This document shows, one piece after another, positions 50,386-55,646 of a stretch of 64,000 nucleotides of DNA. The position numbers and the translations under genes were made by a program. The number at the start of each line of letters is the position of its first letter. Position 1 is the first letter of the stretch. Under the pieces are notes generated by a model. That model saw only the letters and a program-made list of their open reading frames with translations, had not been told where the DNA came from and made no database searches. This DNA is from Salpingoeca rosetta (Eukaryota; Protista; Choanoflagellata), in assembly GCA_033442325.1 (NCBI GenBank), contig JAWQFM010000034.1, positions 544,556-608,555 of the forward strand, written 5' to 3'.

Positions 50386-50578
50386 TGCAACATATTGCCT
50401 TTCTCTCGGTTTGGATGCTTTGGCTTGCTTCGATATATGTATGTTCTTTACTTCTTGCGCATCTCCCCTGTACCATCAAAAGTAGACCAGCGTTGTTCAC
50501 TATCACGAGACTGCGAGCGGAGAGGGGCGACTTGAGTGGCTTGGGTGGCTTGAGGAACTCGTCACAAGAGATCACACA
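50386..50578 (+). repeat. Diverged direct repeat, copy 1 (about 190 bp)
   Basis: Shares blocks such as tgctttggcttgcttcga, cttcttgcgcatctcccctgtacca, caaaagtagaccagc, tatcacgag, gagcggagaggg, gtggcttgggtggct and ggaactcgtcacaaga with 55457-55646. Confidence 0.93.
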
Positions 50579-50984
50579 CACACACACACAACACGAACTC
50601 ACATGTCACATCATGTGTAATATCTGTAACACCACTGGAGCATAACACTGAAGCGCAATGGAATTGTAACTCTTCGCGTGCTCTTGCTGACTTGCTTGCT
50701 TGCGTGCTTGACACACGCACCTCGTTTGTGGACGTGTGACATGAACAAACACACCACAGCAGCCACAGACATCGGAGACCGCTGGACCTCTCACAAGACA
50801 GCCACCCTGTATTCTTCCTTTCACAGCATGAAGTGTGTTGCTTGCTGCCTGCGTGCATGTCTGCGTGTGTGCTTGTCGACAGAGCAACAAGCAGGAGGAG
50901 AGATTTGCGCGTTTGCACGGTTGCTCAGCCGACTCATCCCTCTGCAAGCTCCCTCACCCACACCCACACATCCACACCCACACA

Positions 50985-51077
<93 letters not shown>

Positions 51078-51379
51078 GCACACACACACACACACACAAC
51101 CACGCGCGCTGCAGCGACGAAGACAAGCAAGCTCAGCCGAAGCAGCAGTCAGCAGAGCGCCGGCGCCCACACCGTCTCGTTGTCGAGGATGCCGTCAACG
51201 ATGATGGCTCTGTTGTGGTTTCGAACCAAGCCATCGAGCGCGAGGATGAAGACATTGCCGGCTGCTGCAATGGTATTGCTTGCTTCTTGCTTGTGTCTGC
51301 TGGTTGGCTACAGCATTTGAGCAACAACCGAAACGCCTCACGTACATTCCCCTCTCATGTTAGCCCGCTACTCACACAC

Positions 51380-51473
<94 letters not shown>

Positions 51474-51526
51474 CACCGTCGTCGGCCTTACAGCAGAAAG
51501 AACTGGCAAGCCCAAGATCACTGGCA

Positions 51527-53410
51527 ATGGCCACTGTTGTCCTCAACCTACGTCAACGAAATGTCTTCCAGGAGACTGTGCTGAGATACCTCAACAGCTC
51601 TACTCCTGGTTGTATCGTGGTGCGTTTGGGTGGCTACTCGACAGACGATGCAATTGCTGAACTGAACAAGCACCTGTCGGCGAGCTGGCTCAGCAACTTC
51701 CCTTCGACAGTAACCCATCGCCTTGTGCTGCACGGGGCTGGTGGCCCACGGCACGCAGGCTCTCCTCTGCTGGAGTACCGCCAAGGTGCTACTAACCACG
51801 GCAACAGCCTCGTTGTGACCGTGCACCCGCTTCCGCTCGGCTGTGTTGGTTTTTTGAAGCCCCTGTCCATCCGAAGCGGCTCACACGCAGTTCCGCTTTC
51901 GACAACTGAGGCGGAACAGCGCATCGCGAAGCTGCCATGGCATGGCGTCGTCGACCGTGCATTGCTGCCCTATGACGAGGTTGTGCATGGCCCAATCTCC
52001 CTTGAAGTGCGGATCGGCCATCCCGTGGCGGCAGGGGACCATGCGGGCTGGGACGCAGAGCACAGCACATACGCGTTTCGCACAATGTCGCCTGATGTTC
52101 ATCTGCACGAGGAATCGACACAGCTTGACTTCAAGTCCGGATGTGGCGACGCGAAGCATCCGCAGCTGTTCAGCAGCCCCCGCACGCTCACGAGCAAGTT
52201 GAGCTGCCTGCCCGAGCTCCTCAACGGATCAGAGGCTGCCCAGAGCGGCGTGTTCCTGGTGTATGGCGTCACGGATGACAAGGGCAAACCACACACGGCA
52301 TTGGGCATGCTGCAGGATAAGGCCTCGTGCAGCACATGCACCATTTCGCATGAATACTTTGTGGATCTCCTCAGCAGCATGAACGAGGAGTTGCACGCGT
52401 CACTCTTCCCGCCACTGCCACCCAACAGCGGCTGTCTCACGCTGCACGAAGTGCAAGACTGCTGCACAGCGGTTCTGTCGGGCGATGATATCGGCGACGG
52501 TGACAACAGTGATGACAGCAATGACAGCAGCGAGCTTGTTGTCCACTTTTTCAGCGAAGAGGCAGCGGCGGCGGCACATCTCCGCAATGCTTTGGACGGC
52601 CATGGCGCAGTTCTGTATGCGCCACAGCATGCGCAACCATTCGCCATTGTCAGCGAGGCGGCGACACCATCGCACAAGGACGCCCTGCGCCTCCCTTCTG
52701 CACAGTTGCAGCAGCTCGTGATTGACCAGGGCTGGCAGCACCTGAAGCGATATGTGGTGGTCCTGCACCTGACACCGCCACCAGCGCACGTCGGCTCGTT
52801 CTTCAGCACCATGCGAAATGCGTCACCCCCCTCTGCCCCTGTCTACGAGACGGGCCCTGGCGGCCCACGTGCTGCATGGCTGTCTCGTGTTGGCATGTGG
52901 ATGCGCATGCGCACGGAGCCGGAGCCGCATGCGCATGCGCGCCTCGTTGGCAGCGGATATACGAAGCTGTGCATTGGGCCGGACGACACGCAGCAGCTCG
53001 TGCGCCGGTACTTGGTGGGGGAGGATGTCACGTTTGCAGCACGGTTCACGGACATTGTTTCTGATGAAGACCAACGCAAGCGGGCGCGCAACACTCTGAT
53101 GGGCGACCGCTTGCGCCAGCGACTGATTGTGGCGGACCTGGCTGCTGTGCTTGATGGCAATGCGCTCGCGCTGATCAACGAAGACGCCGGCATTGGCAGA
53201 GGCAATCCCGGCAGCAGCATCGTCATCCTGTCCCGCCAGCTGCTGACGAGAACGGTGTGCAAGGCGCTCATCCCCAAGCTGCAGGTCCTGCGCAGTCACT
53301 GCACCATCCTTGACCTCGCATTTGTTGGTCTTCCTGGTCCCTCGGAACCCGACTTCAGCCGTACCGTCCACCCATCACCACCAGAACAGCAGCAGCAGCA
53401 GCAGCAGCAA

Positions 53411-53505
<95 letters not shown>

Positions 53506-53507
53506 GC

Positions 53508-53565
<58 letters not shown>

Positions 53566-55300
53566 CAGCACACTGCCATCGCAGCCAATTTGGTTTGAAC
53601 GCGTGCCGACGACAGATGCCTTTGGTGTGCTGTCATTTGAAGACCGGCAGCACATGTTTCGGCAGTGGATGGAGGGCAGAACGGATGTGTGCTGGGAGAG
53701 TGTGGTGCTTGGCGACGTCCCATTGACGGCACCGATTCGACGCTTGCAGGACAAAGTCAGCCGCGCGTTTCAAAACAACACGTGCAGCAGAGTAGTGTTG
53801 GACAAGGGTGATGCAGGCACCGGCGCCACGACAGCACTGCGTGTGGTTGCATGCACACAGGCCAGGAACGGCGCGCTTGTGTATTGGGTCGGGGCATCCA
53901 GCGGAGTTGAACGCGGTGGCCGTGGAGGCGACGCCGCTGTGCGCAGTGACAGCGGCAGCGACACGACGAAGCGGCTGTCTGCGGGAGTCCTGTGGTGCGC
54001 ATTCCAGCAACAGCTGCAGAGCACAGGGAGGTCTCGACTGTTGATTGTGCAGGACGAGCGCATCCAGTTGCCCGCGGACTTCATCCGGGCTGTGCAGGTG
54101 AGCATGGCGCAGGGCGGCACACGACTGCAGGTGTGCATTGTCACCTCTGAGCAGCACGGGCAACAAGGAGTGCACCGACCGCACAGGCGTGGCGTGCCGC
54201 GTGCTTCTTCTGTCATCATCTCCCCCTGGCTTCATCACCATGAAGATGTTGAAGCAGTGCACGATCGCCTGGCGACATACTACCCAGACCGCCGCGACGC
54301 CCTTGATGCGGCAAAAGCACACGCACTTCGCTGTATCGGCGATGTTGCCGACGACGGCCATCTTGAAACCCCGCACAACGCATACTATGGCTGCAACCAC
54401 CTGTTTGTGTTTGGACTCGCGGCCCTGTGCGGGCGCTTTGAGCCACCGCGCAAGATGGTGGCCAACATCCTGCATCAGCTCGCCCAGGATACTGCAGCGA
54501 AGACGACGCTGGTTGCGCTGGCCATGCTGCGCGCCTACTGCCTCCACGATGTGCCCATCCCATCTCGCGTGGTTGAGGCTCGAGTTGGAGCGGACTCGCC
54601 TGCATGGAAGCTTGTGTGCAGCGCAGGCTTGACCGGTGAGCACCAGCGGCTGTGTCACGTTTTCTTCGCTCGACTTGTGCTGGAGGAGAGCACGCGCACC
54701 GACGGCCATCGTCTGTTGGACGTGTCTGAGCAGCCTCTGCCGGCGGCTGCACTGGATGCGCTGCTTGCGATCTGGGCCAGCACGTGCGAGCTGCTGCAGG
54801 ACTGTCCAGCTGTGTTGAAAAGCGCAGCAAAGGAAGCTTTGTTGGAGAGGCGCGGGTACGTGTTTGCTCCACTGGTGTCGGCTGCATTCTGGCCCATCAA
54901 CGACCAGCTCCTTGCTGGCCTGTTGGGTGAAGGCCGCGGCCTGACCACGCTGACACCGCATCATGATAGTGGTGATGGTGGTGGTGATGGTGGTGGTGAT
55001 GGTGATGGTGATGGTGATGGTGGTGGTGATGGTGATGGTGATGGTGATGGTGATGATGACCGCCGCGTGGCCGCTGCCATTGATGATCGCCTGCGCAGGC
55101 TGTTTGGCCCAGTGACCACCGGTGCCACCGCGGCATGGCGGAGGGAGGCCAGCTTTGATTTGTATGGACACGAGCTCGTGGTTTGCGCACGCGTGCATCG
55201 GGAAGTGGCGAACAATGCTGTGGCCGGTAAAGTGTGTGCACAGCGGGCGTTGGCCAATGCTCTTGACGCGCGTTGCATCTTCGGTGCTGACCCGTCGTGA
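51527..55300 (+). CDS. Schlafen/AlbA_2-like domain plus P-loop (STAND-like) NTPase plus helical region; SAMD9-like; possibly 3'-truncated
   Basis: An intronless 3.8 kb reading frame. It has ESTQLDFKS...LLNG...GVFLVYGVTDDK (AlbA_2-like), WMEGRTDVCW, GDAGTGATT (degenerate Walker A) and LLIVQD (Walker B). An extra upstream exon (about 51114-51272) is possible. Confidence 0.7.
53385..53563 (+). repeat. Coding (CAG/CAA)n, poly-Q of about 59 residues
   Basis: In frame within the 51527-55300 ORF. Confidence 0.95.
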
Positions 55301-55456
55301 AGATCGCCTGGCACGCAACCTTCTAACCTTCCTTCTGGCCACGTGCTACGCGGCACGCTGGCGGTTCAGCAAGAGTGTGTGTGGGTGTGTGTGGGGTGTG
55401 TGTGTGTGTATGTGGGTGTGTGTGTGGGTGCTGGGTGTGTGGGTGTGGGTGTGGGT

Positions 55457-55646
55457 TGCAACACATTGCCTTTGGGTCTTTGGGTGCTTTGGCTTGCTTC
55501 GACAATATGTTCTTTACTTCTTCTTGCGCATCTCCCCTGTACCACCAAAAGTAGACCAGCTATCACGAGGCTACGAGCGGAGAGGGCGGAGGAGGTGGCT
55601 TGGGTGGCTGTTAGTGCTTAGGAACTCGTCACAAGAAATCACACAC
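55457..55646 (+). repeat. Diverged direct repeat, copy 2 (about 190 bp)
   Basis: Collinear match to 50386-50578 with small indels. Confidence 0.93.

What the first reader, a model, noticed from the sequence alone, without database searches (positions are those of the whole stretch)
50386..55646. The SAMD9-like gene sits in a 5.3 kb cassette bounded by ~190 bp direct repeats
Seen: two collinear, diverged, non-microsatellite copies (50386-50578 and 55457-55646) bracket the AlbA_2/NTPase gene. Copy 1 starts about 90 bp after the cyclase stop; copy 2 ends about 250 bp before the TLDc start. Inference: the gene was inserted together with a duplication of the native cyclase-TLDc intergenic unit (terminator plus promoter). 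It could be lost again by recombination between the repeats, making it an accessory, possibly presence/absence-polymorphic defence island. No transposase, RT or TG...CA LTR ends are evident.
Basis: partly seen in the sequence, partly recalled or inferred. Interest (0 to 1): 0.82.

Follow-up and report, generated by a model that had tools for sequence, protein, structure and literature searches.

The report
Repeat-flanked SAMD9-like gene in a choanoflagellate
In the choanoflagellate Salpingoeca rosetta, two diverged 220-bp copies of one non-coding spacer flank an intronless gene whose ATPase half most resembles the human antiviral protein SAMD9; the repeats are real and local, but it is unproven that they mark an insertion.

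Summary
Window 50372-50594 and 55443-55660 are collinear direct copies (BLASTN E 4e-51). With good gap placement there are 199 matches, 20 mismatches and 15 indel events, so 91% substitution identity. Homology stops sharply at GT-/CA-microsatellite edges.

The window is not human. It is Salpingoeca rosetta scaffold GL832990.1.

The pair is the only non-coding, non-microsatellite repeat in about 152 kb of S. rosetta DNA I could sample. It is absent beside the gene's only paralog and beside a metagenomic relative. It shares no 12-15-mers with the 20 catalogued S. rosetta transposon families. It has no TSD, gag/pol, tRNA or Rfam signature.

The enclosed gene (conserved ORF 51527-55300) is intronless and belongs to a tiny family. 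A model of its C-terminal half matches human SAMD9 best (Foldseek E 4e-9). Its Walker A lacks the lysine, as in SAMD9. AlbA_2 is only weakly indicated.

The best reading is a locus-specific duplication of a regulatory spacer bracketing the gene. "Insertion plus flank duplication" fits but is untested. The "mobile cassette" and "defence island" readings are unsupported. Loss by recombination is now unlikely, because the longest identical run is 25 nt. The more interesting point is a SAMD9-like gene in a unicellular relative of animals.

The parts
50372..50594 (+). Repeat copy R1 (core 50386-50578). It lies in the 528-bp spacer between the cyclase stop (50299) and the annotated start of the next gene (50828).
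   Evidence: BLASTN E 3.6e-51 against R2; 91% substitution identity; sharp ends.
55443..55660 (+). Repeat copy R2 (core 55457-55646). It lies in the 595-bp spacer between the stop of the SAMD9-like gene (55300) and the TLD gene ATG (55896).
45663..50299 (+). Upstream neighbour: multi-exon H-NOX / HNOBA / guanylate cyclase gene (919 aa, EGD80119.1).
   Evidence: Pfam HNOB, HNOBA and Guanylate_cyc; 100% match to P0001; annotation in L001; accession.
50828..55300 (+). Annotated CDS range of the enclosed gene (1329-aa model with 483 nt of introns in its 5' part).
   Evidence: Gene list of L001 with window = locus + 35662. The exon structure could not be fixed uniquely.
51527..55300 (+). Conserved, uninterrupted ORF of the enclosed gene (1257 aa). 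Homology to the two relatives begins right at this ATG.
   Evidence: ORF; alignments to P0007 and P0006.
51155..51229 (+). 25-codon stretch resembling the extreme N-terminus of CDC48/p97. It lies between two (CA)n tracts, upstream of the conserved start, and is absent from both relatives.
   Evidence: phmmer against PDB: the listed best 60 of 67 matches are p97/CDC48-type ATPases aligned at their N-terminal end, best E 0.004. Translation. Not in P0006 or P0007.
52094..52486 (+). AlbA_2-like region. E-x4-[DE]-F-K-S and G-[VI]-x-D motifs are conserved in all three family members.
   Evidence: Alignment A5. The homologous stretch of paralog P0006 gives PF04326 SLFN_AlbA_2 at E 0.013, below cutoff. 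The window protein itself gives no Pfam hit and no PDB profile hit.
53387..53570 (+). Poly-glutamine (CAG/CAA) linker between the N-terminal half and the NTPase half.
   Evidence: the repeat finder family D6; ORF translation. It is the source of most spurious database hits.
53570..55297 (+). STAND-type NTPase plus helical array (C-terminal 576 aa).
   Evidence: AlphaFold model pLDDT 74.8, pTM 0.73. Foldseek top six hits are human SAMD9 (E 4e-9 to 4e-7), then EfAvs5, Apaf-1, CED-4 and NLRs. Pfam nSTAND_NTPase5 E 1.9e-6, below cutoff.
53816..53833 (+). Deviant Walker A, G-T-G-A-T-T: alanine where the P-loop lysine should be. A lysine is conserved five residues upstream of the first glycine of this motif.
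   Evidence: Translation. Alignment A4 shows the lysine is missing in all five aligned family members. Conserved residues.
55896..58624 (+). Downstream neighbour: multi-exon TLD-domain gene (304 aa), starting MGQGSS.
   Evidence: Annotation with PF07534 TLD; sequence.

Best explanation
R1 and R2 are a locus-specific pair of paralogous non-coding segments. About 220 bp (perhaps up to about 290 bp, counting simple sequence) of one intergenic spacer was duplicated in cis, so that a copy now lies on each side of an intronless SAMD9-like STAND gene.

CDS-to-CDS spacers in this compact genome are only about 530-1060 bp. Each copy therefore fills about 40% of a spacer that must hold the upstream gene's 3' end signals and the downstream gene's promoter.

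The most economical history (inferred, not shown) is one rearrangement. The gene unit was placed, or re-placed, between the guanylate cyclase and the TLD gene at breaks in GT/CA microsatellites. Fill-in or template switching copied the spacer core to both sides, so both neighbours kept an intact regulatory spacer and the newcomer gained one.

The copies have since drifted roughly neutrally: 9% substitutions and many slippage indels. They are not transposon ends, and they are now too diverged to drive efficient excision.
For: - The repeat is real, present as two copies, in the same orientation, with sharp ends in simple sequence.
- It is the only non-coding, non-microsatellite similarity in about 152 kb of S. 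rosetta DNA. All other hits are exons of cyclase or kinase paralogs.
- No copy lies near the paralog or the metagenomic relative, and neither of those has flanking repeats.
- None of eleven 12-15-nt strings (five conserved motifs on both strands, plus the scaffold name) occurs in the published sequences and alignments of all 20 S. rosetta TE families. MITE finders found no MITEs in this genome (PMC6875170).
- There is no TG..CA boundary with a 4-6 bp TSD, no RT, integrase or transposase domains, no tRNA or Rfam family, and no significant RNA fold.
- The gene differs in structure from its neighbours: a 1257-codon uninterrupted ORF between two intron-rich genes.
- Its 5' region carries a CDC48-like fragment that the relatives lack. 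This suggests a patched-together upstream region.
- Mismatches are spread as neutral drift predicts, with runs of 14-25 identical bases.
Against: - Genome-wide copy number could not be measured. Zero extra copies in about 147 kb only bounds the family below roughly 1,000 copies in a genome of about 55 Mb (size from general knowledge).
- No empty site, no synteny in a relative and no transcript ends were available, so the link between the duplication and the gene's arrival is inference.
- The gene lineage is old: 28-35% identity to the paralog and to the M. roanoka homolog. The repeats are 91% identical. So the duplication is much younger than the gene family and may have nothing to do with the gene's origin.
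- The CDC48-like match is short (E 0.004), and a word search for it failed.
Confidence: 0.5

Rival explanations
1. The gene was already resident between the cyclase and the TLD gene. Later, about 220 bp of one spacer was copied into the neighbouring spacer 5 kb away, by ectopic repair or template switching at microsatellites. The copy may have been kept because it supplies 3'-end or promoter function. The bracket geometry is then incidental to the gene.
For: - The repeats (91% identity) are far younger than the gene's divergence from any relative (28-35% amino-acid identity).
- Both repeat ends lie in GT/CA simple sequence, which favours slippage or template switching.
- Recent local duplications do occur in this genome. 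Cyclase paralogs about 16 kb apart share 91-95% nucleotide identity.
- Both copies sit at similar positions in their spacers, 233 and 235 nt before the next annotated ATG.
Against: - A duplicated spacer piece would have to land exactly in the next spacer, in the same orientation, without any homology to guide it.
- The model does not explain the intronless gene between intron-rich neighbours, or the CDC48-like patch upstream.
Confidence: 0.3
2. R is a member of an uncatalogued low-copy dispersed element: solo LTRs, or the two LTRs of a dead element that captured a host gene. The 5,289-bp span with about 220-bp terminal direct repeats mimics S. rosetta LTR retrotransposons.
For: - The geometry matches known S. 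rosetta elements. Sroscv1 is 5,290 bp with 243-bp LTRs, and Sroscv2 is 4,813 bp with 190-bp LTRs (PMC6875170). The span here is 5,289 bp.
- The core starts with TG and the copy ends in CA-rich sequence.
- The enclosed gene is intronless, as a retro-copied gene would be.
Against: - No 4-6 bp TSD exists for any TG..CA boundary combination.
- There are no gag, pol or integrase remnants.
- There is no PBS-like TGG next to R1 and no purine-only tract before R2.
- No shared 12-15-mers with any of the 13 LTR families or 7 DNA transposon families.
- No other copy in about 147 kb.
- The paralog is also intronless but has no repeats.
Confidence: 0.12
3. R is an old functional element, such as a shared promoter or terminator module or an unannotated RNA gene, kept similar by selection or gene conversion rather than by a recent origin.
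For: - Blocks of 96-100% identity (15-41 nt) alternate with indel-rich linkers.
- Both copies sit at similar spacer positions.
- A common open frame covers about 45 codons of both copies.
Against: - Run lengths fit neutral drift at about 9% substitutions plus indels.
- There is no Rfam hit, and folding is no better than shuffles, with z +1.3 to +3.2 for three segments and -0.3 for one.
- The shared frame is broken by a net -1 indel in the second half.
- No similar element occurs in the other sampled spacers.
Confidence: 0.06
4. Assembly artefact: a collapsed or mis-joined region of the draft scaffold.
For: The record is a draft scaffold, and there is a 399-N gap elsewhere in the window (62598-62996).
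Against: - There are no Ns within 49000-57000.
- The copies differ by 20 substitutions and 15 indels, so they are not duplicated reads.
- The annotated gene models run cleanly through the region.
Confidence: 0.02

Closest known systems
SAMD9/SAMD9L family of animal antiviral STAND proteins (Mekhedov et al. 2017, PMC5445408) and the bacterial Avs5/Avs9 analogues (PMC12680541)
   Same: - The order of parts: a putative AlbA_2-like N-terminal region, then a STAND NTPase, then a helical array.
- The best structural matches of the C-terminal half are human SAMD9 chains, followed by EfAvs5.
- The Walker A lysine is replaced by a small residue: GAT/S here, GGT/S in SAMD9.
- A conserved basic residue lies just upstream of the P-loop: Lys here, His in SAMD9.
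   Different: - No sequence-level match to SAMD9 in PDB.
- Pfam gives only sub-threshold nSTAND_NTPase5 and, in the paralog, AlbA_2.
- No SAM domain, and no detectable SIR2-like or OB-fold domain.
- The protein is 1257 aa against about 1590 aa.
- TM-scores are low (0.3).
- The host is a unicellular holozoan, where a 2025 survey reported no SAMD9/Avs9 analogues.
Segmental (DNA-level) gene relocation with duplicated flanks, i.e. long TSD-like duplications from staggered breaks or template switching
   Same: Two direct copies of local spacer sequence bracket one gene. Homology stops abruptly. The breakpoints lie in simple sequence.
   Different: No empty site or donor locus is known. The repeat, at about 220 bp, is much longer than transposase TSDs. 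The event cannot be dated or tied to the gene.
S. rosetta LTR retrotransposons (Sroscv1/2; Southworth et al. 2019, PMC6875170)
   Same: Overall size (5.29 kb) and terminal direct repeats of about 190-240 bp.
   Different: No TSD, no gag/pol and no sequence match to any catalogued family. The interior is a cellular gene with a homolog in another species.

Membership tests
SAMD9/SAMD9L family | STAND-type P-loop NTPase with a lysine-less Walker A (GGT/S instead of GKT/S) | tested here: met
   Foldseek top six hits are human SAMD9, E 4e-9 to 4e-7. Walker A is G-T-G-A-T-T, and the lysine is absent in all five aligned family members. The SAMD9 feature is as described in PMC5445408. The residue here is Ala, not Gly.
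SAMD9/SAMD9L family | N-terminal AlbA_2 (SLFN-type) nuclease domain with acidic active-site residues | tested here: inconclusive
   The window protein gives no Pfam hit. The paralog's homologous stretch gives PF04326 at E 0.013, 16.5 bits against a cutoff of 25.3. E-x4-[DE]-FK and GV-x-D motifs are conserved. The PDB profile search is negative, and the N-terminal model is too poor to use (pLDDT 42.7).
SAMD9/SAMD9L family | SIR2-like domain between AlbA_2 and the NTPase | tested here: inconclusive
   No Pfam hit for residues 359-618. The structure model of this part is unusable.
SAMD9/SAMD9L family | TPR/helical array after the NTPase | tested here: inconclusive
   The model is all-helical after the NTPase core, and Foldseek aligns about 630 columns to SAMD9. 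There is no Pfam TPR hit, and TM is only 0.3.
SAMD9/SAMD9L family | C-terminal OB-fold | tested here: not met
   The last roughly 230 residues of the model are helices plus a disordered Gly/Asp repeat, with no beta-barrel. Some accepted family members also lack domains (PMC12680541).
SAMD9/SAMD9L family | Detectable sequence homology to accepted members | tested here: not met
   An exhaustive phmmer search of 1.84 billion representatives returns only one S. rosetta paralog, one M. roanoka protein and a few weak metagenomic proteins. No PDB SAMD9 sequence is hit.
LTR retrotransposon | TG..CA LTR ends with a 4-6 bp target-site duplication | tested here: not met
   No matching 4-6-mer for any TG start (50330-50400) and CA end (55625-55700) combination.
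LTR retrotransposon | Internal gag/pol (RT, RNase H, integrase) or remnants | tested here: not met
   Pfam scans of the whole interior ORF find none.
LTR retrotransposon | Similarity to a catalogued S. rosetta TE family | tested here: not met
   None of eleven strings (five conserved motifs on both strands, plus the scaffold name) occurs in 799,301 characters of TE sequences and alignments. Line wraps and divergence could hide a distant match.
Dispersed repeat (SINE/MITE) | Many copies scattered in the genome | tested here: inconclusive
   Zero further copies in about 147 kb of sampled S. rosetta DNA. The whole genome was not searchable with these tools.
Dispersed repeat (SINE/MITE) | A tRNA, 7SL or 5S-derived head, or terminal inverted repeats | tested here: not met
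   ARAGORN finds no tRNA. There are no Rfam hits in R. The inverted repeats found are only (CA)n/(TG)n. MITE finders found none in this genome (PMC6875170).
Local segmental duplication | Two collinear copies in cis, far above chance, with defined ends | tested here: met
   E 3.6e-51; z = 25 against shuffles; flanks at background.
Defence island | Clustering with other immune or defence genes | tested here: not met
   The neighbours are an LRR receptor kinase, a large low-complexity protein, a guanylate cyclase, a TLD protein and glutamine synthetase. PADLOC hits are poly-Q artefacts.

The most novel reading that the evidence does not exclude
The enclosed gene and its relatives are true pre-metazoan members of the SAMD9/Avs9 lineage: AlbA_2 nuclease plus a lysine-less STAND NTPase. 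They occur in choanoflagellates, where surveys found none. In S. rosetta, one copy sits in a repeat-bounded unit that records DNA-level relocation and may be presence/absence polymorphic among isolates.
Probability: 0.12. Interest if true: 0.7.

Novelty: new member of a known kind. Interest (0 to 1): 0.38.

Why it matters
The repeats by themselves are a small, old local duplication of modest interest. At most they are a footprint of how a gene was slotted into a compact protist genome without damaging its neighbours' regulatory spacers.

The enclosed gene matters more. A 2025 survey of SAMD9/9L analogues reported hits in animals, bacteria and archaea but none in protozoa, and argued for convergence between the animal and bacterial forms (PMC12680541). 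A choanoflagellate protein whose NTPase half is closest in fold to human SAMD9, and which shares SAMD9's odd lysine-less P-loop, would be a candidate link between the two. S. rosetta is a tractable model organism, so this could be tested experimentally.

Tried and rejected
- **Word search, whole gene:** searching the 1257-aa protein gave nothing, not even the genome's own annotated model. An exact look-up also found nothing.
- **PADLOC:** only poly-Q artefacts.
- **PDB sequence and profile searches:** the whole family alignment and the AlbA-like block gave only low-complexity or chance hits.
- **N-terminal structure:** the AlphaFold model from a 3-sequence alignment was unusable (pLDDT 42.7), so no fold search was run on it.
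- **CDC48 lead:** a word search for the CDC48-like fragment, meant to reach the S. rosetta CDC48 locus, found only 6 candidates and none scored. Whether the fragment is a DNA-level copy of that gene's 5' end stays open.
- **Metagenome scan:** the 25-nt conserved core gave 0 matches.
- **Wider homology at the 5,069-nt offset:** tested on diagonals and by global alignment against shuffles. None was found, so a larger tandem duplication is rejected.
- **RNA gene or structured element:** rejected.
- **LTR element:** rejected as the main reading.
- **Bacterial-type promoter/terminator scan:** not informative for a eukaryote.
- **Annotated exon structure:** it could not be reconstructed uniquely; 59 GT-AG solutions fit.
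- **Green alga guess:** my early guess, from TGTAA motifs after R1, was wrong. The organism is a choanoflagellate.

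
Full report
**Source of the window.** The window is not human. An exon-bearing ORF of the upstream gene matches a Salpingoeca rosetta guanylate cyclase at 100% identity (P0001, EGD80119.1). The protein is encoded on scaffold GL832990.1 of GCA_000188695.1, and locus L001 maps onto the window with window = locus + 35662. The public annotation there lists:
- an H-NOX/HNOBA/guanylate cyclase gene (window 45663-50299);
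- a 1329-aa gene with no Pfam domain on record (50828-55300);
- a TLD-domain gene (55896-58624);
- glutamine synthetase (from 59562).

My Pfam scans agree with this. The sequence is intron-rich, with (CA)n/(TG)n tracts in introns and spacers.

- BLASTN finds 50372-50594 against 55443-55660: 79% identity over 234 columns, E 3.6e-51. There is no third copy on either strand of the 64-kb window.
- With affine gaps there are 199 matches, 20 mismatches and 15 indel events, i.e. 91% identity at aligned bases. Several indels are simple slippage.
- The similarity ends abruptly. Diagonal identity outside the repeat is at background. The spacer remainders to the left and right score no better than shuffles (z -0.1 and 1.1), against z = 25 for the repeat itself.
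- Both ends run into simple sequence, GT/G-rich on the left and CA-rich on the right, so the ends are uncertain by about 15 nt.

**What the repeat is not.**
- It is not an RNA family, a tRNA-derived element or a stable structure.
- It is not an LTR pair in the usual sense. No TG..CA boundary combination has a 4-6 bp target-site duplication. The interior has no gag/pol or transposase domains.
- None of eleven 12-15-nt strings (five conserved motifs on both strands, plus the scaffold name) occurs in the published sequences and alignments of the 20 S. rosetta TE families. That survey also found no MITEs (PMC6875170).
- The size coincidence is still worth recording. The bracketed span is 5,289 bp, and Sroscv1 is 5,290 bp with 243-bp LTRs.
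- It does not look like a dense dispersed repeat. I could reach about 152 kb of S. rosetta DNA: the window plus four loci on two other scaffolds. An all-against-all BLASTN finds this pair as the only similarity that is neither a microsatellite nor an exon of a paralogous cyclase or kinase gene. This bounds the family below roughly a thousand copies. It does not exclude a low-copy family, and the whole genome could not be searched with these tools.
- A metagenome scan for the 25-nt core found nothing.

**The enclosed gene.**
- The conserved protein starts at the ATG at 51527 and runs uninterrupted for 1257 codons to 55300.
- An exhaustive HMMER search of 1.84 billion representatives finds only two clear relatives. 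P0006 is S. rosetta PTSG_06649 on another scaffold (E 4e-88). P0007 is a Microstomoeca roanoka transcript product (E 3.5e-82).
- A few weak hits lie outside the poly-Q and Gly/Asp repeats (P0011, P0027, P0060).
- The three main proteins are 28-35% identical to one another. The window protein aligns over its full length with the M. roanoka protein. The lineage is therefore old, and this is not a recent copy of the paralog.
- The paralog is also intronless: 4512 nt for 1503 codons. So is P0027, which sits on a eukaryote-like metagenomic contig.
- Neither of those genes has flanking repeats or any copy of R. The repeat bracket is a property of this locus, not of the gene family. That speaks against a mobile cassette.

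**Is it SAMD9-like?** Partly.
- Pfam gives only a sub-threshold nSTAND_NTPase5 hit for the C-terminal half (E 1.9e-6, 28 bits against a cutoff of 34).
- A six-sequence alignment gave a usable model of that half (pLDDT 74.8, pTM 0.73).
- Its six best Foldseek matches in the PDB are human SAMD9 chains (E 4e-9 to 4e-7). They are followed by EfAvs5 (SIR2-STAND), Apaf-1, CED-4 and NLRs. TM-scores are low (about 0.3), as expected for a flexible multidomain comparison.
- The Walker A reads G-T-G-A-T-T. The canonical lysine is missing in all five aligned family members, and a lysine five residues upstream of the first glycine is conserved.
- Mekhedov et al. describe exactly this kind of anomaly as a hallmark of SAMD9: GGT/S instead of GKT/S, with a conserved upstream histidine (PMC5445408).
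- The AlbA_2 call is weak. The window protein gives no hit. The homologous stretch of the paralog gives PF04326 at E 0.013. An E-x4-[DE]-FK-S and G-V-x-D pattern is conserved in all three proteins. PDB profile searches are negative, and the N-terminal model was unusable.
- No SAM, SIR2-like or OB-fold domain could be shown.
- Overall, the protein works like, and may be distantly related to, SAMD9/Avs-type STAND proteins. Membership in the SAMD9 family is not established.
- This matters because a 2025 survey found no such analogues in protozoa (PMC12680541). The paper searches returned no paper that discusses SAMD9 in choanoflagellates; the single paper holding both terms is about progranulin.

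**How the bracket most likely arose.** This part is inference.
- CDS-to-CDS spacers here are about 530-1060 bp. Each 220-bp copy therefore fills about 40% of a spacer that must contain the upstream gene's 3' end and the downstream gene's promoter.
- Three features point to a unit that was placed or rebuilt at this spot. There is a copy on each side of a structurally atypical (intronless) gene. The breakpoints lie in microsatellites. And there is a 25-codon CDC48/p97 N-terminus-like patch upstream of the conserved start, which the relatives lack.
- The spacer core would have been copied to both sides.
- It is not demonstrated. The repeats are far younger than the gene lineage. A later spacer-to-spacer copy independent of the gene is a serious rival (about 0.3), and recent local duplications do occur in this genome.
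- A low-copy uncatalogued element (about 0.12), a selected element (about 0.06) and a mis-assembly (about 0.02) follow.

- "Defence island" is unsupported. The neighbours are ordinary genes.
- "Could be lost again by recombination" is weak today. The copies differ by 20 substitutions and 15 indels, and share at most 25 identical bases in a row.

**Limits.**
- No genome-wide search, transcript ends, relative's genome or population data could be reached. All three word searches and the one exhaustive search were used.
- The genome's own annotated 1329-aa model could not be retrieved from either protein collection. Its 5' exon structure could not be fixed.

Noticed in passing
window 51155-51229 (+): A 25-codon stretch between two (CA)n tracts matches the extreme N-terminus of CDC48/p97. 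The listed best 60 of 67 PDB matches are p97/CDC48-type ATPases aligned at their N-terminal end (best E 0.004). It lies upstream of the conserved start of the SAMD9-like gene and is absent from both relatives. It may be a captured exon fragment, or part of a chimeric annotated 5' end.
   Followed up: partly
window 50594-50828 and 55660-55896: The distance from the end of each repeat copy to the next annotated ATG is almost the same, 233 and 235 nt. Yet the two stretches are unrelated in sequence (z = 1.1 against shuffles). This is either coincidence or a shared promoter geometry.
   Followed up: partly
window 51527-55300; L002 10001-14512; L006 10001-13453: All three genomic members of this gene family are single uninterrupted ORFs of 1150-1503 codons, in intron-rich eukaryotic DNA. 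This would fit origin by retroposition or horizontal transfer.
   Followed up: partly
window 53816-53833 and alignment A4: The Walker A lysine is replaced by alanine, or by leucine in one metagenomic relative, in every family member. This parallels the GGT/S P-loop of SAMD9. A lysine five residues upstream of the first glycine is conserved in the three full-length proteins.
   Followed up: yes
L003 10122-12429 vs L004 11035-13310 (scaffold GL832957.1): Two H-NOX guanylate cyclase paralogs about 16 kb apart share 91-95% nucleotide identity over more than 2 kb. This is a recent local duplication, or gene conversion, in the same genome.
   Followed up: no
window 62598-62996: A 399-N assembly gap. 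It explains the apparent GC drop (0.43) and AT skew in the last 2 kb bin of the composition profile.
   Followed up: yes
window 493-686 vs 31052-31245: A 195-bp similarity at 75% identity between two kinase-domain exons. A partial kinase gene lies at the window start, and an LRR receptor tyrosine-kinase-like gene lies at 26486-31400.
   Followed up: no
window 50828-55300: The genome's own annotated 1329-aa product of this gene could not be found in either protein collection, by word search, exhaustive search or exact look-up. Its neighbours' products are present.
   Followed up: partly
window 53387-53570 and 54963-55064: A long CAG/CAA poly-glutamine linker and a GGT/GAT Gly-Asp repeat are embedded in the coding sequence. 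The S. rosetta paralog has a Q-rich linker at the same place, and the M. roanoka protein does not.
   Followed up: no
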